From: Thalia democratica
Lineage: Eukaryota
Direction of reading: 5' to 3'
Assembly (NCBI GenBank): GCA_965202585.1
Contig: OZ241832.1
Location: 56,916,001 to 56,980,000, forward strand
DNA: 64,000 bases
In this document: in pieces, positions 32,101 through 60,900 of the stretch
Layout of the letters: the number at the start of each line of letters is the position of its first letter
Numbering within the stretch: the stretch's first letter is position 1
Made by a program: the position numbers and the translations under genes
The notes under the pieces: model-generated
What the model was told of the DNA's origin: nothing
The model's input: the letters and a program-made list of their open reading frames with translations, nothing else
Database searches by the model: none

Positions 32101-35100
32101 GTTTCGTAGCAACATTATGGGAAAAATCTAACTAGTATTAGAAAAGTTCAAGTTTTGCGAAACGCTATTACTCTTGGTTATTTTAAGTATAATTTAAACA
32201 GTTGTTAGTTTTGTGTTAATCTCATTAATTTTTTTTGTTACCCTTACACGGCATTATCAAAACAAGTCAATTATGTCTACTAAAGTACTTTGTTAAATGT
32301 AAAAATTAAGATTTTAAATTATTGTTTCAGTTTAACTATGTTTTAAAAGTTTGTACATTTTACTTTTATATCAATGCTTTTTGAAAGGTTATTTAGTTGT
32401 ACATTATAATTCTATTAAGTAATTTATAATCTTATTACTTTTTTAATATTATTCTGAATCTTGATAGTTGTTCTGAGTAAAAGATTAAAATTATTACCTT
32501 TAAATAAAACTTGAAAATTGTTTACAAATTACTGATAATAAATTATTATTTTTTTAGACTTTGATTAACCCAGTAACCGAATAAAACATTTTTATGTTTT
32601 CAATTGTGAGTTAAGTTCAAAAAAAAAATCAATTTATTGTTTGCTTTCATCAATAACTAAACTAAGAAAAAATTTTTGTAAGCATTTATATCGATAAACA
32701 AAAACAAGTCAATATATGTTTTAAACATTATTTCTATGTTAAAGTTCAAAGAAAAATAATGCTAAATATTTGTTGTTAAAGCTAGATGGGGTCAATATTT
32801 TTTTTTGTTGTCAATCATGAAACTATTGTTATGACAAATTTATAAAAAAATAGAAAAACATATGAAAAGAAAAAGTTGATATCAAAAGACGTTTTGACAG
32901 ATGCAGAAATTATCTTTGAGATTAGTACTTTTTCACCTTTTTCAATAATGTGTAAGTCAGATGGGTTAGACGGAATTCATTTTGATGAACACATATTTAA
33001 TAATTCACTATTATATCATTATTTAATAAAGTTATTACGTTCAAGTGTTAATAAGACATGTAAAAACAGTTTTTATTTGCATTAAAACTAACACCTACAG
33101 GTAAAATTATCGACACATACTGCTAAATCTTTAATGAAATCTTTTTTTTGTTTGAAAGTATTATACATCTAGTAAGGGACGCGAACTGCTAAATAAAAGT
33201 TTCCAAAAAACCACAATGAACAAGTTAACCGTTTTTGCTGCTAGATTACTTCCGAGAAAGTTTTTTAAATATTTTTTTTGTTTTTGCTTTAATTCAAAAA
33301 TAAATCAGCTTAAAACACGAAAAAAGTTGGTACTGACTTCTAGTAACGTTGTTTTAAAATGAAATTTAAATAGCAACTGCTGTAGTTGTAAGGTTTTGGA
33401 AACATTTACATTTAAGCAGTAAATTCATAACATTTTACGATTGAGGTAAAGTGATAATACAGCAGAATATTAGGAACATCACCATCCCCAACCAACCTTA
33501 CCCAAAACTTTTTATCTATACAGTTATCCCAAACCCACCTTACCAAAAAATATAAAAAACGAGCCAAAACACAAAAAAATTATTACTTAAAACTTAATAT
33601 AGTATTAAGTAAAATATTAACCAATCAAAAGCCACTTAAAAATGCAGCTGACGCATTTAAAATTCATGTGTTATTCTTGAGCAACAGGTGCCATTTAGTT
33701 GTGAATGTCGTCTTTAACTTGTTAAGGAAAGCTGAAAATTTCAAAAAAAAAAAACTCAACTTTTGCATTAATGTTGCAATATTGGATAACAGATTATTTT
33801 ACAATTGACAATATAAAATCACATGCTATGTCCATATCCGTGTTTTTTTTTCGTAAAATATGTTTTATGACCTTTAACGATTTTCAATTGTAAATCACGT
33901 AGGTAGTATTGCTAAAGCGTTGATTTTAATTTTAAAAGTATTGATTTAATTTTTTAATTAATTTTCGACTATACTTTTTCAGTATACTTAAAGTTTTTTA
34001 AATCTTTTTTTTTTTTCAATGTTTTTTATTCTTTTTGTTTTCTCTTACAAACACTTTTTAATTACTTTAAATTGAAAAATAAGACAATATATTAATCTCA
34101 ACCCTTTACGAGATAATTTCAATCATAAAGCTTAAAGCTTTGTTTGTTAAAGTCTTTCTCAGATTTTCAAAATGATTTACCATAAAATTTTTATTTATTA
34201 AAAATTTTGTATTTTAGAGGCATAACCATGTTTTAAAAGCTTATCTAACAAAATCAGTGCATCAATAAAACAGGTGTCTGGTTTTATTTTATAACTTTTA
34301 CTCGTTTATTACTTTTATTGTTTTTAAAGTAAATTGCGGAAATTTCAAGCTGTAAATCACAGAACGCAGTCTAATCACATGAATTTTTTATACACTAAAA
34401 ATACTTTAAACAGTTTAAAAATACACTTTTTCTATACAAATTCTAAATCTGTTTGTTAATACATTTAAGAAATTTCACTCATTAATTCATGAGATATATA
34501 CAAGTAAATTTGTGTTTGCATTTTAACAATAATATCATCATGGGACTTTAATTTATTGCGCTAAAATCGATAGTTTTTTAGTCATGCTATCTCATAGTGA
34601 TTTCATTACAAAAATAAAAGTAACAAGTAACGAAAATTTGTGTTGGATATTCGTGATAATTTTTTATTTGCAATTTTGCGTGTAGCTGCAACTTGGTTGT
34701 GCCGTAAAAATAACTTTTGTTATTTTTGTTTGATTTTGTTTATGTTAAGAAAAACTAGTTTTTTTTAAAGATTGCTTTATATTTTAATATTTTTTTACTT
34801 GATTAGTTGTTAGTTAAGTTTTTTAATGAAAAGAATAATTTACATCTAAACATGTTTGACAGAGTTAAGATTGAATTAAATTAGTTTAAGTTTTTTAAGT
34901 GTTTTATTATATTCAGTTAAAATTAGAATGTTTCGATATGTATACTTACATATATATATATCTATATTAAAAAATTAATAGAAAATTGTGATTGGTTTAA
35001 ATCACTAAGAAACTTGAGGTAAAAACAAAAAACTTTAAAGCTATGTACCAGTTGTTTATTTACTTTTAGTTATTTGATCTACAGCTAAAACAAAGCTGCA

Positions 35101-53038: not shown

Positions 53039-56000
53039 AACACTTTTTCACTTCAAACACTTTTATTAGAAATTAATATTAACAACTACTATCTGTAAGT
53101 TTCTTTATTGAAAGCTAAATCAGCAAAATTATTTGTAAAACTTTTGATAATAATTTTGTTAATGCTAGAAACGTATGCAAACTAAACTGTATACATTTTT
53201 TTATCGAGCAAAACATCTCTCAAAAATTCTGAGTTAAATTTAAAGAAAAAACAAATCGATAACAAATAAACTCGTCTTAGAATGATTTAAAAAGTCGACT
53301 TGCAGAAATTTAACTATTATAAAATTATCACAAACTAACAAAACTCATTTAAAGTAAGTCTAAATAACCTTACTTTTATTCCCAAACCAACTATATAAGA
53401 TTCAGTATATCTTAAAAAAAAAAGAAATAACTTAACCTCAATATAATTAGAAATTATTGATTACCTGTTGAGCATACAAGCAACTCTTAAGTTAAAAACA
53501 GTTCTTAAATTTTTAGTACAAGTTAAACTGTATTAAGATATATCGATTTACAAAAGTGTATAGTCTCTTGAAGTTTAACATTTCATTTCCTCAATTCTCA
53601 AAAGGTTTTACTTATATAGGTTACAACTTTCTTTAGAAGTTATTAAGTCTAGTGTCAATACTTCTGACATTTATACCACCATGCTTCCAGAAGAGCACAA
53701 AAAAAGCTTACCGAAAAAAAGGATGGTTGTAGAAAAATAAATCCACCAAAAGTCTGCTTAAAGTTCAAAGACTTCTTACAATGTTTATTGAACTTGATAT
53801 TATTGCAAGTTATAATCGTAAAATAGTTATTACAAAAAATTGTTTTCTTTAATTTTTAAGAAATGCTGAATCTTCTCAATCAGGAACAATTATTCATTTA
53901 CTTTGTTACGCAATTATTGTTTATCGCAGTTTTTGGATTTTTTTACTTTTTATTATTGAATGCTAACTTTTGTAGACAAAATAAGTGTTTAAAAACTAAA
54001 ACATTTACTTCTATCAAGAAATTTAAGTGACACAGGATCTTTAATATACAGTAGTTTTAATCTTAAAAACTAGAGAAATTGTAAATTTAAAAGAGTAAAA
54101 AAGCTTAAATTTACTATAATGAAAATGATTATTTATAAAACTAGTTTAAAAAATAAAAACACGCTTTTTAAGTTGTGTTTCACAACTGTTTTTGACTGTA
54201 CTCTATTAACTGTTAATTCGTTTTTTTTGCTTAATGTCAAAATAGATAAAGTTGTTCTTATTACACAGATTAGTTTTAGCTGTAAAACAAATATTTTTTG
54301 TTAAACCAATTTGATTTTAACCAATCACTATCATCTAATAGTAAATAAAAATGAATAAAAATGAAAACCAAAACATTCCAATTTTAACTGAGAATAATTT
54401 AACACTTTAAAATCTTCAACTAATTTAATTCAAACTTAACTTTGTCAAACATTTTTGAAAGTAAATTATTGTTTTCATTGAAAAATGTAACTAGCATCTA
54501 ATCATGTAAAAAAAGATCAAAATTTAAAACAATCTTTAAAAAAAACAAATTTTATTAACATAAACAAAATCAAAATTGTTTTTATAGCAGAACCAACTAG
54601 CAGCTACACGCAAAATTGCAAATAAAAAATTGTCACGAAAACCAAACATAAATTTTCGTTACTTTTATTTTTGTAATGGAATCACTATGTGTTAGCATGA
54701 CTAATAAAACTATCGATTTAGCGCAATAAATTAAAGTCCCATGATGATATTAATGTTAAAATGCGAACACAAGTTTACTTGTGTGTATCTCATGAATTAA
54801 TGAGTGAAATTTCTTCAATGTTTATATTAACTCGGTTTAGAACTTATATAAAAAGTGTGTATTTTTAAACTGTTTAAAGTATTTTTAGTATATAAAAAAT
54901 TCATGTGATTAGACTGCGTTCTGTGATTTACAGCTCAAAAATTCCGCAACTTATTTTAAAAACAATAAAAGTAATAAACGCGTAAAACGTATTGAAATAA
55001 AACCAGACACCTGTTTTATTGCTGTACTGATTTTGTTTGATAAGCTTTTAAAACATGGTAATGCCTCTAAAATACACTTTTTTAATAAATAAAAATTTTA
55101 TCGGAAATATTTTGAAAATCTGAAAAAACTTTAACACACAAAGCTTTAAACTTTATGACTATAAGTATCTCGTAAAGGGTTGAAATTATTCTATTGCTTT
55201 TTTCTAATTAAAAGTAATCGAAAAGTGTAAGTAAGAAAAAACAAAAACAATAAAAAACATTGAAACACAGATTTAAAAAACTTCAAGTATACTGAACAAG
55301 TATATTCAAAAGTTAATTAAGAAATTAAATCAATACGTTTTCAAGAAAAATCAACGCTCAAGCAATACTGCCTACGTGTTTTACAATTGAAAATCGTTAA
55401 AGGTCATAAAACATATTTTACGAAAAAAACACGGATATGAACATAGCATGTGATTTTATATTGTAAAATCTTCTACACAATATTGCATAATTGTTGGAGA
55501 AATTGAGTTTTATCTTTAGACATTTACAGCTTTCCTTAACAAGTTAAAGACGACATTCGCAACTTAATGGCACATGTTGCTCAAGAATAACACATGAAAT
55601 TTAAATGCGTCAGCTGCAGTTCTAAGGTCGCTTCTGATTGGTTGATATTTCACTTTTTTTATTTTTAGCTTTAACTGATAATTTTTTTTTGGTTAATTTT
55701 TTTACATATTTGGGTAAGGTGGTTTAGGGATAAGTGTACATATTGAAAATCTTGGGTAAGGTGGGTTGGGGAAAAGGTTGTTTTTAATATTCTGCTGTGT
55801 TATCACTTTACCTCAATCGTGTAATGTTATAAATTTACTGCTTGAATGGAAACATTTCCAAAACCTTATAACTGCAGCCGACCCCTTTTAAATTTTATTT
55901 CAAAACAACGTTACTAAATGTCAGTACGATTTTATTTCGTGTTTTAAGCTGATTAGTTTTTGAATAAAAGCGAAAACAAAAAACAAATATTTAAAAGAGT

Positions 56001-56200
56001 GTTTTGGAAGTAATCTAACAAAAAATATGTTAACTTTTTATTGTGGTATTTTGGTAACTTTTATTTAGCAGTTCGCGTTCCTCACTAGTTTTAAAATACT
56101 TTCAAACAAACATAAGAAATGAATTCATAAAAACAATAAAACTTCATTAAAAATTTGACAACATGTGTTGTTAATTTTACTTTTAGGTGTTAGTTTTGAT

Positions 56201-56473
56201 TAGTGATGTACCGGACCTACAATTTCGGGTCCGGCCGGACCCGGATCCGGACTTTTTTTTCAAATTAGAATCCGGCCGGAACCGGATCCGGATTTTTTTT
56301 TCAAAATAGAATCCGGCCGGAACCGGATCCGGACTTTTTTTTCAAATTAGAGTCCGGCCGGAACCGGATTCGGACTTTTTTTCAAATTAGAATCCGGCCG
56401 GATCCGGATATCAGACAAAAATTGCAATATCCGGCCGGACCCGGACCCGGATAGTGAATCCGGTACATCACTA
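56201..56473. mobile_element. hAT-type MITE (273 bp) built from ~40-bp ATCCGG-rich tandem units
   Basis: 15-bp perfect TIRs and about four units of CCGGATCCGGACTTTTTTTCAAATTAGAATCCGGCCGGAA. A second, left-truncated copy lies at 57744-57940. Confidence 0.88.
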
Positions 56474-57940
56474 GAATAAACTAGCCTGAGTCAGAATGAG
56501 GTTTTTAAAAACTGAAAAAAAAAGAACTTTAATTTATTAATAAGTAGAACAGCTAGCCACAAGGTTTACAAATTTAGGTGTTATTCACAATTAAAAATCT
56601 GAAATCAAGTTCTTGAACAAAATACACTAGAAAATTTAAAAATATTGAAAACTGGATCAGCTCAAACTCATTTAAAATCTAAAAGAAAACTAGCCTGAGT
56701 TGTTATAAAAAACTAAACTAGCCTGAGGCAGTCCAAGATTTTCTAAAATTCCCAAAATTTTTCAAACTAGCAGGGTTGCCACTGTTTAATTCAATAAAAC
56801 TAGCAAGAGTGAGTATAAACAAGCCTGAGTCATAATGAGGTTTTTAAAAACTGAAAAAATTACTTTAATCTAATAATCAGTAGAACAGCTAGCAAAGGTT
56901 GAAAATTTGGTAGTAAATTTGTGGACTGATTGTGGTACACTTAACTTATTAGTACTACCCATCATAACTAAATCCTACTTTATTTAATTAATATCTAAAA
57001 AATACTAAATTCTAACTAAGACTACTTTCTATGATCAGACACGACAGTTTTGAGTGATGAATCTTTTATATAAAACACAACAAGAAATACTAGAAATATT
57101 ACTTTGGTAACACTTTAAAAACTGGACGCTATTTAAATCTATATCAAAAGACTTAAAACTAAAAACTAAAAATTCAATAAAACTTTTAGTAAACAAGAAA
57201 CTGTAAAATTTTTAATAAACTATTAAACTACAAACCTGGCTTAAATATTTAAACAATTAAACACCTGTTGAAATATTCACTTTTAAAACAAAACACTACT
57301 TACAATAAGCATTCACAAAAACATTCAAGATATTTTGTTGTATCAAGCTACACACGAAACTAACTAACTGCTTACATATAAACTGCCTGTCATATTCTGA
57401 TGTTTTGTTGCATCAGTATTTAGTTTGAAACATTTCGTCATATGATTCTCATTGGCTCGTACATTCAACCGTATTAACTCTAAATATTCTCTGAGCTCAA
57501 CTTTGAACAATAAATAATGCAAGTATTCATTCCAAAGTTTTCAATTTTACAACATTTGTAAAAAGTTGCATTTCATGAAATGTTTATTTCATAGTTTAAA
57601 TGTAAACAATTGTAAATTAGTCACGTGTACAAAATGAGCCCACGGTAGGTGTTTAATTTTAACTGACGAAAATGACTCTTATTAATTCACACAGGGTTTG
57701 TTTATGAAAAAATACTTTTCAGTATGCTCTTTTTTACTAACTAGATCCGGGTCCGGACTTTTTTTTTAAAATTAGAATCCGGCCGGAACCGGACCCGGAC
57801 TTTTTTTTCAAGTTAGAATCCGGCCGGAACCGGATCCGGACTTTTTTTTCAAATTAGAATCCGGCCGGATCCGGATATCAGACAAAAATGGCAATATCCG
57901 GCCGGACCCGGACCCGGATAGTGAGTCCGGTACATCACTA
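56201..57940. mobile_element. Composite hAT-type insertion (1740 bp): complete MITE + ~1.27-kb cargo + 5'-truncated second MITE
   Basis: Outer TIRs TAGTGATGTACCGGA / TCCGGTACATCACTA. Perfect 8-bp TSD GTTTTGAT at 56193-56200 and 57941-57948. The paralogous arm has the empty site (33081-33088; reverse complement GTTTTAAT). Confidence 0.9.
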
Positions 57941-60900
57941 GTTTTGATGCAAATAAAAGCTGTTTTTACGTGTCTTATTAACACTTGAACGTAATACTTT
58001 ATTAAACAATAATATTATAGTGAATTATTAAATATATATTCATAAAAATAAATTCCGTCTAACCCATCTGACTTACACATTGTTGAAAAATCTGAAACAA
58101 TTCTAATTTCAAAGATAATTTCTGCATCTGTCAAAACGTCTTTTGATGTCAACTTTTTCTTTTCATATGTTTTTCAATTTTTTTTTTGAAATTCGTCATA
58201 ACAATAAATACATGATTGACAAAAAAAAACAAAATACTGACCCTTTTTAGTTTCAAAAACAAATATTTAACGATGTTTTTCCTTGACCTTAAACATAGAT
58301 ACAATATTAAAAACATATATTGACTTGTTTTTGTTTATCGATATAAATGCATATAACATTTTTTTTAGTTTAGTTTTTGATAAAAACAAACAATAAGTTG
58401 ATTTTTTTTTTGAAATTAACTCACAATCGTATTATTAAAAATGTTTTATTGGGTTACTGGGTTAATCAAAATTTAAAATAATAATAATTTATTATTAGTA
58501 ATTTGTAAACAAACTTTTTAACTTTTATTTTAGAGTAATAATTTTAACCTTCTACTTAAAACCTTTTTTAATAGTCAGATAAATATTAAAAAAGTAATAA
58601 GAATTTAAATAATTTAAGAGAACTATAAAGTACTACTAAATATTCTTCCAAAAAGCATTGATATAAAAGTAAAATGTACAAACTTTTAAAAAACACTTAA
58701 ACTAAAATAACAATTTTAAGTTTTAATTTTTACATCTAACCAAGTACTTTAGTAGACATAATTGACTTGTTTTGAAGCTGCCGAGTAAAGTTAACAAAAA
58801 CAATAATCAGATTAGTAGAAAACTAACAGCTTTTCAAATAATTAAAGAGTAAAGACGTTTTGGAAAACTTGAACTTTTCTAATACTAGTCAGACTTTTCC
58901 CATAATATTACTACGAAACTGCTGTAAACAATACAACATCATTCGATTGAGGAAGTGTTCAAACTTAACTTATCATTTAAATACTGCATGAAGCAATTTA
59001 CTGCTGAGTTTATTTAAAAAACAAAGCATTGTTTTTCAAGCACTAAAACAATTATGTACAATTTAAAGGTAGTACGTATATGAGTTTAGGAAGTTTATAA
59101 ATAAAACTTTGAATAAATAAATTAAATAAAGTATCTGCGTTTAATTTATAAGCGAATTTTCACAGCATTTCGAATGCTAAATTTAAAAATCTAACTTAAG
59201 TATGTATTGTAATTTGAACAGTCTAAAACTCTTTTAACTAACTTGGCTATTAAGTAAACTAGTTAAAATTTAAAATATAAAGTGTCTGAAATTTCTAATC
59301 AGACACTTATTAATTATTGTCAATGAATAACTTGAATAACAGTTTTTCAAATGAGTCGAGCTGTTTTAAAAAGATTCCTAACTCCACTTATTAGGCAAAA
59401 TTAAATAAAAACTGTTTTGTTATAACAAAAACACTGAGATTTAAAAAAAAAAAAAGAACTAAGCATGCTGTAAAGATAATTAGTAAATGAAAAAAAATAA
59501 CTTTTAAATATTCATTTTGACTAAAATAATATTCACATTTTCTTAAGCAAAAAATGAAATCTTTAACATTTGCATACTAACTTCATTTGATGCTTTACCG
59601 GTTGGCCAACCCATAAGAACATTTTTTACTTTTTGAAGTTTTCTTTTAAAATAATTTTTTAACATTATACCAAGCATGTCACAAGTTTTATGACTGTCAA
59701 TTAAAAAAAGTACAGGAAGTGTTGATTTTTTGAAATTTTTTAACAATTTAAGCGAAGGAGGTTAAACTCAACTTTGAATAGACACCTCAATCAAACACGA
59801 TACAGTTAGTCACAAAATTTGTTACTGGTGGTTTTTTTTGAATGAACTGACTTTTAGGACTAAAAGAACTCAAGCTTTCAAAGCTTGAGGAAGTTTAGTT
59901 TCAGAATCGAACTTTGGAGCCATACAAATTTGTCACGATCTTTTTTAATGGCTAAAGTTAAACTTGTTTTGCAGAGTAGTAAAAATTCTGTATATTCTAG
60001 CAACCTAATAGAAGGTTTATCTAATTCAAACTTTATTAAGCATTAAACTTAATAGAAAAAATTATATAAATAGTACAACAAGTGCAAATTATTTTTTTTT
60101 TATTACCAGATATCGGTGGTAAAAAATAACGACCTTGATAAGTATAACAAATGTATTTGTACTTTTATAATCATTTATATAAGATCTTTACATTCCAGTA
60201 TATTGAGCAATATTTTTTAGTTAAGAAAAAATACTGTATAAAAAAATGTACAAATCTCGTTCAAATACTTACTATAACCGTTGTATTTTGACTAATATAC
60301 ATATTTGATAAACCATAACATTTATAATTTAAAAAGATACGTTTGTATGTAAAAACATCGTAAATTAAAGGACTTATCCTAACTCAAAACATAAATTAGA
60401 AAAAAAAAACATTCAAATATGTAAATATTGTTTTATAAACCAAATAGTACTATTACTAAAAAGTAAAAAAAAAAGCTAGAGATATAAAACTAAAAGTATA
60501 TATACTAAATTTAAAACAAGAAAAAAAAAACTTGAAAACTTCGAGCAACTAACAAGTTTGAAAATAAATTTGCTTAATAAATATTTCAGCATTTTTTCAT
60601 GTTTGATTAGCTTAAAAATAACTTACTTTTTCTGTAACAACTGGGTTTGAAAAAGACTTTTGGAACATAAAAAAAAAACATTAAGAGACATAGTTAAACT
60701 TGTTAACGCTTTAAAACATTTTATCTAATAATTAAACAACAAATAAATTTGTTGAGATCAAATACGCATGCTAGACGGAATCATTAACAGATAAAAACCG
60801 TTTTAGTTTTTTTCAAACTGTCAAAACCTTTATTTTTAAAATAAAATATAGCTCATAATTACAAAATCAAACTAAAACAGTTCGTAACGTGTATTTATTA

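What the first reader, a model, noticed from the sequence alone, without database searches (positions are those of the whole stretch)
56193..57948. Composite MITE transposon that moved ~1.27 kb of cargo, with the empty site visible in the same window
The inner complete MITE (56201-56473) has no TSD of its own. The 8-bp TSD GTTTTGAT instead flanks the whole unit, from its left TIR to the right TIR of a second, left-truncated copy ending at 57940. Arm A retains the uninterrupted site (33081-33088). The three-part unit therefore inserted in one event after the segmental duplication, like a bacterial composite transposon or a Pack-type element. An 8-bp TSD with TAG...CTA ends indicates hAT (established). 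It lies ~3.2 kb upstream of the copy B start codon and could differentiate paralogue expression (inference).
Basis: partly seen in the sequence, partly recalled or inferred. Interest (0 to 1): 0.7.

Follow-up and report, generated by a model that had tools for sequence, protein, structure and literature searches.

The report
Common hAT-type jumping element copy
The 1.74-kb three-part insert upstream of one gene copy is real and did land in one event, but it is one ordinary copy of a jumping-DNA family present roughly two thousand times in this genome, not a one-off capture of local DNA.

Summary
At 56201-57940 a 273-bp module with both terminal inverted repeats, a 1270-bp core and a 197-bp right module are bracketed by a perfect 8-bp duplication, GTTTTGAT. 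Arm A has the uninterrupted site with one mismatch (GTTTTAAT). Two further paralogues beyond the window, C and D, are also empty, and C reads exactly GTTTTGAT.

The "cargo" was not picked up here. All 30 full-length core copies fetched from ten chromosomes have the same three-part layout and the same internal junctions. Of 33 independent complete copies, 28 have a perfect 8-bp duplication around the whole unit, each different, and 3 have one mismatch. Target sites fit the hAT pattern nTnnnnAn. Copies differ from their consensus by a median 2.1%. Exact-word counts suggest about 1,500-2,500 copies.

The 273-bp "complete MITE" was never seen alone. Every copy examined adjoins this core or a related one. 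The unit is therefore a young, abundant non-autonomous hAT-like family. It may have begun as a two-MITE composite (macrotransposon), but that is not shown. No effect on paralogue expression is shown. Other first readers of this scan noted the same family on other DNA of this genome. Interest is low to moderate: a new member of a known kind.

The parts
56193..56200 (+). Left copy of the 8-bp target-site duplication, GTTTTGAT
   Evidence: Direct reading. Fits nTnnnnAn. It scores in the top 0.8% of window 11-mers under the family's target model, which was built without this copy.
56201..56473 (+). It holds the left end TAGTGATGTACCGG (56201-56214), 4.4 units of a 41-bp CCGG-rich subterminal repeat (56230-56409) and an inner copy of the right end, CCGGTACATCACTA (56460-56473).
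   Evidence: The same module sits at the left of all 30 fetched core copies. It was never seen alone.
56474..57743 (+). It contains an internal direct repeat (56473-56575 and 56815-56908, about 85% identical).
   Evidence: More than 36 near-full-length copies at 93-96% identity on ten chromosomes, out of 2,306 first-look candidates. No ORF over 53 aa lies inside it. No Rfam match near any gathering score. Internal repeat.
57744..57940 (+). Right terminal module: 3.1 units of the same 41-bp repeat (57747-57876) and the outer right end CCGGTACATCACTA (57927-57940). In the family consensus this module is 233 bp. It looks like the left module without about 20 nt of its outer left end, with only TAG kept (57742-57744 here).
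57941..57948 (+). Right copy of the 8-bp target-site duplication, GTTTTGAT
   Evidence: Direct reading.
33081..33088 (-). Uninterrupted (empty) target site in paralogue arm A. It reads GTTTTAAT on the minus strand, one mismatch from the duplication.
   Evidence: The matching empty sites in paralogues C (GTTTTGAT, exact) and D (ATTTTAAT) lie beyond the window at about window+71.3 kb and +91.1 kb (loci L061, L063).

Best explanation
The unit at 56201-57940 is one copy of a young, very abundant, non-autonomous cut-and-paste DNA transposon family of hAT type. Copies are about 1.55-1.8 kb long, and there are roughly 1,500-2,500 of them in this 802-Mb genome.

Every copy has the same fixed layout:
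- a left module of about 270 bp that carries the left end, 41-bp CCGG-rich subterminal repeats and an inner copy of the right end;
- a non-coding core of about 1.28 kb;
- a right module of about 200-235 bp with the same repeats and the right end.

A transposase encoded elsewhere (not identified here) cuts at the two outermost ends. It inserts the whole unit into an 8-bp target of the form nTnnnnAn (best GTTwwAAC), and that target is duplicated.

One such insertion hit the upstream region of paralogue B, 3.16 kb from its modelled start codon. This happened well after the gene family had duplicated, so paralogues A, C and D keep the empty site.

Shown: the anatomy, the family membership, the single-event insertion, its timing and the target preference.

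Inferred: the hAT transposase as the agent, the subterminal repeats as its binding sites, and the idea that only the outer ends are used.
For: - Same three-part layout and same two internal junctions in all 30 fetched core loci.
- 33 independent complete copies: 28 have a perfect 8-bp duplication around the whole unit, each different, and 3 have one mismatch.
- T at duplication position 2 and A at position 7 each occur in 28 of 31 sites, against about 37% background (p about 1e-9). There is also a symmetric T at -3 and A at +3. The pattern nTnnnnAn is the published Hermes/hAT preference, and hAT ends need about 200 bp of subterminal repeats (PMC10368747).
- Copies are 1.3-3.5% from their consensus, median 2.1%. 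The window copy is 2.7% away.
- Exact-word counts in the genome: the 14-nt end 4,657 times, a core 22-mer 959 times, a core/right-module junction 22-mer 840 times and the inner-junction 22-mer 422 times. All reversed controls gave 0.
- Summed contig depth over the element is about 2,000-3,000 times that of the flanks in two runs (rough only).
- Only B carries the copy. A, C and D are empty and show no footprint. Flanks are 81-88% identical between paralogues.
- The outer ends are exact in 61 of 66 cases and the inner right end in 22 of 33 (Fisher p = 0.0025). This fits use of the outer ends only.
Against: - No autonomous element or transposase with these ends was found. The hAT assignment therefore rests on the duplication length, the end motif TAGTG (YARNG) and the target preference.
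- A less selected sample, the 25 core sites in the first 26 Mb of contig C1, was cross-read by hand. It gives a weaker contrast: inner end exact in 11 of 25, outer ends in 32 of 50.
- Copy numbers are estimates from exact words and contig depth, not counts.
- The reads did not yield a contig that bridges either junction, so the assembly of this copy is not independently confirmed.
Confidence: 0.87

Rival explanations
1. One reading: two MITE copies at or near this locus mobilised 1.27 kb of local or donor-locus DNA in a one-off composite (Pack-type) event, and the result is seen here.
For: The unit-wide duplication and the lack of a duplication around the inner module are what such an event would leave.
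Against: The identical structure, with the same internal junctions, occurs at 33 or more independent sites, each with its own duplication. By word counts it occurs about 1,500-2,500 times. The core occurs nowhere else in the window. All 36 or more best full-length core hits sit inside the same unit. The window copy is a typical family member, 2.7% from the consensus.
Confidence: 0.03
2. Origin of the family, option A (macrotransposon). Two MITE-like elements inserted in direct orientation about 1.28 kb apart in some DNA. The second lost about 20 nt of its left end. The outer left and right ends then moved the whole block, which became the amplifying form.
For: - The consensus right module equals the left module minus about 20 nt of the end, with TAG retained.
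- The bases next to both inner ends resemble preferred targets. The core start GAATAAACTAG is in the top 3.1% of window 11-mers. The core end, read on the other strand (GTTAGTAAAAA), is in the top 1.4%.
- hAT macrotransposons are documented in maize (PMC9910405; bioRxiv 10.1101/082677). The same route to MITE-like families was proposed for P elements in Anopheles (PMC1562414).
Against: - No solitary copy of the 273-bp module was found among 29 best hits. Nor was one found among the TIR pairs under 300 bp apart in the first 26 Mb of contig C1.
- No locus carries both predicted ancestral duplications, GAATAAAC before a left end and TTACTAAC after a right end, within 2 kb. Cut-and-paste would remove the donor anyway.
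- The target-likeness test depends on where I placed the boundary.
Confidence: 0.4
3. Origin of the family, option B. A short deletion derivative (MITE) inserted into the left part of its own longer parent element, and its left end took over as the terminus. On this reading the right module is simply the parent's natural right end, not a truncated MITE. A variant of this option is aberrant gap repair or template switching after excision.
For: - A second subfamily of about 1 kb has the same left module and inner end. It continues with different first bases, GTTTTMACATA, in the top 0.03-0.2% of target-like 11-mers. It then shares core segments at 80-87% identity. Junctions made at the inner end therefore arose more than once or were remodelled.
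Against: No parent element without the left module was seen. The core end next to the right module also looks like a target site, and TAG is retained there. Option B does not predict either.
Confidence: 0.3
4. The insertion predates the paralogue duplications and was later excised from A, C and D.
For: hAT elements do excise. One family locus (L037) shows a palindromic junction that looks like an excision or deletion scar.
Against: This would need three independent, perfectly clean excisions, whereas hAT excision normally leaves footprints. The A, C and D sites are single, unaltered octamers in colinear flanks. The element is much younger (2.7% from consensus) than the paralogue split (12-19% flank divergence).
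Confidence: 0.03

Closest known systems
Non-autonomous hAT elements and hAT MITEs (Ds-type elements of maize Ac/Ds; hAT MITEs with subterminal repeats)
   Same: 8-bp target-site duplication. Short ends that start TAGTG (YARNG). Target pattern nTnnnnAn. About 200 bp of repeat-rich subterminal sequence at each end. No coding capacity. High copy number with low divergence (PMC10368747).
   Different: The left end carries a complete inner copy of the right end, so the first 273 bp look like a whole MITE. No matching transposase gene has been tied to the family.
hAT macrotransposons of maize (Ac/fAc and Tam3L pairs)
   Same: The outer ends of two nearby elements act together. The block moves with one shared 8-bp duplication, and the inner element has no duplication of its own. 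This is the diagnostic used for the White Cap locus (10.1101/082677; PMC9910405).
   Different: The maize cases are single or few-copy events of 10-28 kb or more that carry genes or enhancers. Here a small 1.74-kb non-coding unit has itself become a family of thousands. The two-element origin is inferred, not shown.
Pack-MITEs and transduplicating hAT MITEs (for example mHatvine-10.1 of grapevine)
   Same: hAT ends and subterminal regions surround an unrelated internal segment that is conserved across all copies. This implies one capture followed by amplification of the composite (PMC2817404).
   Different: For mHatvine-10.1 a genomic source of the captured region was identified. Here no source locus was found, and the core shows no gene fragment. 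The inner complete end is not a Pack-MITE feature.
Bacterial composite transposons (Tn10, Tn5)
   Same: Two copies of a small mobile unit bracket a passenger segment, and the outermost ends are the ones used.
   Different: The bacterial flanking IS elements are autonomous, both are usually complete, and each can move alone. Here neither module encodes a transposase. The right module lacks its inner end, and the left module was not seen to move alone.

Membership tests
hAT superfamily (non-autonomous member) | 8-bp target-site duplication | tested here: met
   Perfect GTTTTGAT at this copy. Among 33 independent copies, 28 have a perfect 8-bp duplication and 3 have one mismatch.
hAT superfamily (non-autonomous member) | Target preference 5'-nTnnnnAn-3' | tested here: met
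   T at position 2 in 28 of 31 sites and A at position 7 in 28 of 31, p about 1e-9 each against the window's base composition. The preference is as published for Hermes (PMC10368747).
hAT superfamily (non-autonomous member) | Short terminal inverted repeats that begin YARNG | tested here: met
   The ends are TAGTGATGTACCGG and CCGGTACATCACTA, exact at both outer ends here and in 61 of 66 outer ends across the family. The YARNG rule itself comes from my own knowledge.
hAT superfamily (non-autonomous member) | Shares its ends with an autonomous element that encodes a hAT transposase (BED finger, RNase-H-like core, hAT dimerisation domain) | not tested
L073, a 5.1-kb interval between two ends, proved to be a family copy with a nested insertion and no ORF of 100 aa or more.
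MITE (for the 273-bp left module taken alone) | Occurs as independent short copies, each flanked by its own target-site duplication | tested here: not met
   All 29 best genome hits adjoin core sequence; one of them, L037, keeps only 11 bp of it. All 8 exact end pairs 253-283 bp apart, and all 7 shorter pairs, in the first 26 Mb of contig C1 adjoin this core or the related subfamily core. None has a duplication of its own. The sample is limited, so rare solitary copies are not excluded.
Composite transposon or macrotransposon | One duplication flanks the whole block, and the inner element lacks its own | tested here: met
Composite transposon or macrotransposon | The flanking modules are (or were) independently mobile elements, and the passenger is DNA from between two insertions (a donor configuration exists or existed) | tested here: inconclusive
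   The sequences beside both inner ends are target-like, in the top 3.1% and 1.4%. However, no solitary module was found and no donor locus carries both predicted duplications.
Pack-type element (Pack-MULE or Pack-MITE) | The internal segment is a captured host gene fragment or an identifiable genomic region | tested here: not met
   No ORF over 53 aa lies inside the core. No Rfam family matched near its gathering score. Every fetched full-length core hit lies inside the same unit. No protein-level search of the core was possible with such short ORFs.

The most novel reading that the evidence does not exclude
The family is a natural hAT macrotransposon: two MITE-like insertions plus the DNA between them, with one inner end disabled. 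On this reading it out-competed its own components and amplified to about two thousand copies in a marine planktonic animal. Its still-intact inner end would keep generating alternative-transposition products, namely the ~1-kb subfamily with a different junction and the L037 scar. That would make it a small, abundant natural system for studying end choice and alternative transposition in hAT elements.
Probability: 0.3. Interest if true: 0.45.

Novelty: new member of a known kind. Interest (0 to 1): 0.25.

Why it matters
For this locus, the insert is a datable presence/absence marker. It distinguishes paralogue B from A, C and D, and it shows that the family was active after the gene family expanded.

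For the genome, one consensus of about 1.79 kb explains roughly 0.4% of the sequence. It also settles several similar 'composite transposon' notes made on other windows: they describe one repeat family, not separate capture events.

The unusual left end, a full inner copy of the right end that is less conserved than the outer ends, is a modest curiosity about how hAT transposases choose ends. Nothing here shows an effect on gene expression.

Tried and rejected
- Nested insertion of the core into one MITE or a tandem MITE. Rejected. The left module is complete and the right module overlaps it by 197-233 bp. The core has no inverted ends and no duplication, and the junctions are identical in all copies.
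- Search for solitary 273-bp MITEs. None was found among the loci in hand. Two apparent solitary copies, L066 and L068, turned out to be left ends of a second subfamily that shares a different internal sequence.
- Search for an autonomous partner. L073 and L074, larger intervals between ends, hold only family copies, one with a nested insertion, and L073 has no ORF of 100 aa or more. No further genome fetches were possible, and I did not try to get around that.
- Donor-locus test with the two predicted ancestral duplications. No locus carries both. The test is uninformative, because cut-and-paste removes the donor.
- Metagenome scan with the 16-nt end. It gave 53 single chance hits in contigs of 33-68% G+C, and none contains the family.
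- Presence or absence among individuals. The runs are short Logan contigs and no listed contig bridges a junction. X3 record 24 stops 2 nt inside the element's right end, as an empty site would. It has 10 mismatches in 148, so it is more likely a paralogue, or the corresponding site in a diverged organism, than an allele of B.
- Transcription. Family contigs occur in a metatranscriptome (X15). With about 2,000 genomic copies, DNA carry-over cannot be excluded.
- Rfam. Only sub-threshold matches, 17-31 bits against gathering scores of 50-125.
- The multiple alignment mis-placed the left end because repeat numbers vary. I therefore took end-conservation figures from pattern matching, not from the alignment.
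Full report
**1. What is in the sequence**

- GTTTTGAT lies at 56193-56200 and again at 57941-57948.
- The element between them, 56201-57940 (1,740 bp), starts TAGTGATGTACCGG and ends with the exact reverse complement, CCGGTACATCACTA.
- A second exact copy of that right end lies inside the element at 56460-56473. The first 273 bp therefore look like a complete small element.
- That module has no duplication of its own: GTTTTGAT on the left, GAATAAAC on the right.
- The last 197 bp (57744-57940) align to 56279-56473 at 93.9%.
- Both modules hold a 41-bp CCGG-rich tandem repeat, with 4.4 and 3.1 units.
- The 1,270 bp between the modules occur nowhere else in the window. They contain one internal direct repeat of about 100 bp, no ORF over 53 aa and only sub-threshold Rfam matches.

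**2. The empty sites and the timing**

The window holds an inverted segmental duplication. With 50 kb of flanking sequence fetched, the paralogues form an array of at least four copies, given in window coordinates:
- A: 29.0-43.0 kb, plus strand.
- B: 61.8-47.3 kb, minus strand.
- C: 75.7-62.1 kb, minus strand.
- D: from beyond 94 kb down to 81.3 kb, minus strand.

It reads GTTTTGAT in C, an exact match, and ATTTTAAT in D. In all three the flanks are colinear and there is no footprint.

The 1-kb flanks of B are 81-88% identical to those of A, C and D. The element is only 2.7% from its family consensus. The insertion is therefore specific to B and clearly younger than the duplications.

I did not verify the gene model itself.

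**3. The "cargo" is not cargo picked up here**

The window is G000:C8:56916001-56980000 in an 802-Mb genome.
- A search of that genome with the 1,270-bp core returned at least 36 near-full-length copies at 93-96% identity on ten chromosomes, out of 2,306 first-look candidates.
- In all 30 fetched loci the core is preceded by the same left module, whose inner right end abuts GAATAAACTAGCC. It is followed by the same right module, with the junction ...ACTAACTAG/ATCCGGG.
- After removing copies carried along by later segmental duplications, and adding complete copies from other fetches, 33 independent insertions remain. They are 1,552-1,795 bp long, and the length varies with the number of 41-bp units.
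- Of these, 28 have a perfect 8-bp duplication around the whole unit, 3 have one mismatch and 2 have none. The octamers differ from site to site, although GTTAAAAC recurs at three unrelated sites.

Exact-word counts in the genome, all with 0 for the reversed controls:

| Word | Count |
|---|---|
| 14-nt end | 4,657 |
| Core 22-mer (core positions 8-29) | 959 |
| Core / right-module junction 22-mer | 840 |
| Inner-junction 22-mer | 422 |

At 2-5% divergence per site these counts imply roughly 1,500-2,500 copies. Summed contig depth over the element in two runs is about 2,000-3,000 times that of the flanks. This agrees, but it is only a rough measure.

**4. Superfamily**

The insertion sites give a clear target pattern. 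T at duplication position 2 and A at position 7 each occur in 28 of 31 sites, against about 37% background (p about 1e-9). There is also a symmetric T at -3 and A at +3. The best site is GTTwwAAC.

The pattern 5'-nTnnnnAn-3' with an 8-bp duplication is the published Hermes/hAT preference. hAT ends are known to need about 200 bp of subterminal repeats (PMC10368747). The ends begin TAGTG, which fits YARNG (my own knowledge).

The hAT assignment is therefore well supported on cis features. The defining link to a hAT transposase gene could not be tested.

**5. Is the 273-bp module a MITE?**

I found no evidence that it moves alone.
- All 29 best genome hits to it sit directly beside core sequence; one of them, L037, keeps only 11 bp of the core.
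- In the first 26 Mb of contig C1, all 8 exact end pairs 253-283 bp apart adjoin the core.
- All 7 shorter pairs fetched (L066-L072) adjoin the core or a second internal sequence.

That second sequence (GTTTTMACATAAAAAGTAGAGC...) defines a related subfamily of about 1 kb. It has the same left module and inner end, and it shares two core segments at 80-87% identity.

Across the 33 independent copies the outer ends are exact in 61 of 66 cases, against 22 of 33 for the inner end (Fisher p = 0.0025). This fits constraint on the outer ends only. A less selected hand tally on C1 is weaker: 32 of 50 against 11 of 25.

**6. How the family may have arisen (inference)**

In the 1,786-bp consensus the right module is 233 bp. 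It equals the left module without about 20 nt of its outer left end, and a TAG remains at the boundary.

I scored sequences with a target model built from 29 other sites. The bases next to both inner ends look like insertion targets:
- The core start is in the top 3.1% of window 11-mers.
- The core end, read on the other strand, is in the top 1.4%.
- The subfamily-2 junction is in the top 0.03-0.2%.

This modestly favours an origin from two separate insertions whose outer ends then moved the block, which is a macrotransposon. Such events are documented for maize Ac and Tam3L (PMC9910405; 10.1101/082677). The same route to MITE-like families was proposed for P-element MITEs in Anopheles (PMC1562414).

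There are three weaknesses:
- The boundary choice is mine.
- No solitary module was found.
- No locus carries both predicted ancestral duplications, although cut-and-paste would erase the donor.

A MITE nested into its own parent element, or aberrant repair after excision, remain live alternatives. Capture followed by amplification of a composite hAT MITE has a precedent in grapevine, mHatvine-10.1 (PMC2817404).

**7. What was not shown**

- No effect on expression of paralogue B was tested.
- The runs found are short contigs. X1 matches the flanks perfectly and is probably the source individual. X3 (organism B) is 8-9% diverged in the flanks, yet holds the family at similar depth.
- No listed contig bridges a junction, so neither polymorphism nor the assembly of this copy could be checked.
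- Family contigs in a metatranscriptome may be DNA carry-over.
- A metagenome scan with the 16-nt end gave only chance hits.

**8. Earlier notes of this scan**

Four first-reader notes on other windows of this genome describe units of 1.70-1.80 kb as composite hAT transposons built from MITE arms (s1-301493, s1-292017, s1-281812, s1-301569). None has been followed up. They fit the family described here but are not independent evidence. I did not see their sequences.

**9. Verdict**

The single-event, post-duplication insertion and the hAT-type mechanism are supported. The reading as a locus-specific capture of cargo by independent MITEs is not.

This is an ordinary insertion of an abundant, young, non-autonomous hAT-like family with an unusual duplicated-end architecture. 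It is a new member of a known kind, of low to moderate interest.

Noticed in passing
window 29000-64000 and beyond (L061, L063, L065 = window +64001 to +94000): The MAM-like paralogues form an array of at least four copies: A on the plus strand, then B, C and D in tandem on the minus strand. Non-coding flanks are 81-88% identical. Copies C and D lie mostly outside the window.
   Followed up: partly
L037:1480-1800 (G000:C4:100098222-100098494): The left 273-bp module is followed by only 11 bp of core. Then comes a palindromic junction, GTTTTGAT/TCAAAAC, made from the flanking octamer. It looks like a hairpin-type hAT excision or deletion scar that removed the core and the right module.
   Followed up: partly
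L066:201-616; L068 (reverse strand); L074:4347-5370: A second subfamily of about 1 kb has the same left module and inner right end. Its first internal bases differ (GTTTTMACATAAAAAGTAGAGC...), and it then shares core segments 123-251 and 1061-1270 at 80-87% identity. The junction at the inner end was therefore made or remodelled more than once.
   Followed up: partly
L073:500-5609 (G000:C1:19945249-19950355): A family copy is split by a nested insertion of about 3.3 kb at unit position about 872-879. No ORF of 100 aa or more lies in the locus, and the insert was not identified.
   Followed up: no
L009, L012, L029: Three insertions at unrelated loci share the identical duplication GTTAAAAC. This underlines a strong target preference (consensus GTTwwAAC).
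   Followed up: yes
L002/L004/L005; L016/L017; L027/L028 (the last pair 3.3 kb apart on contig C9): Family copies with identical flanks and duplications occur at two or three places. Later segmental or tandem duplications have copied already inserted elements.
   Followed up: partly
window 55200-58900 laid with runs X1, X3, X4, X15: A second labelled organism (X3) has flanks 8-9% diverged yet holds the family at similar depth. Marine metagenomes and one metatranscriptome also contain family contigs. The family is therefore shared beyond the sequenced individual and is detectable in seawater samples.
   Followed up: partly
window 57451-57455 and about 57636-57645; family consensus positions about 1250-1264 and 1443-1457: The core consensus carries two oppositely oriented CCAAT-type motifs about 190 bp apart (cattggctc and gagccaatcacgg). 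The window copy lacks the AAT of the second one; some contigs in the runs have AAT put in behind 57640. The motifs might be a remnant promoter of a parent element. Untested.
   Followed up: no
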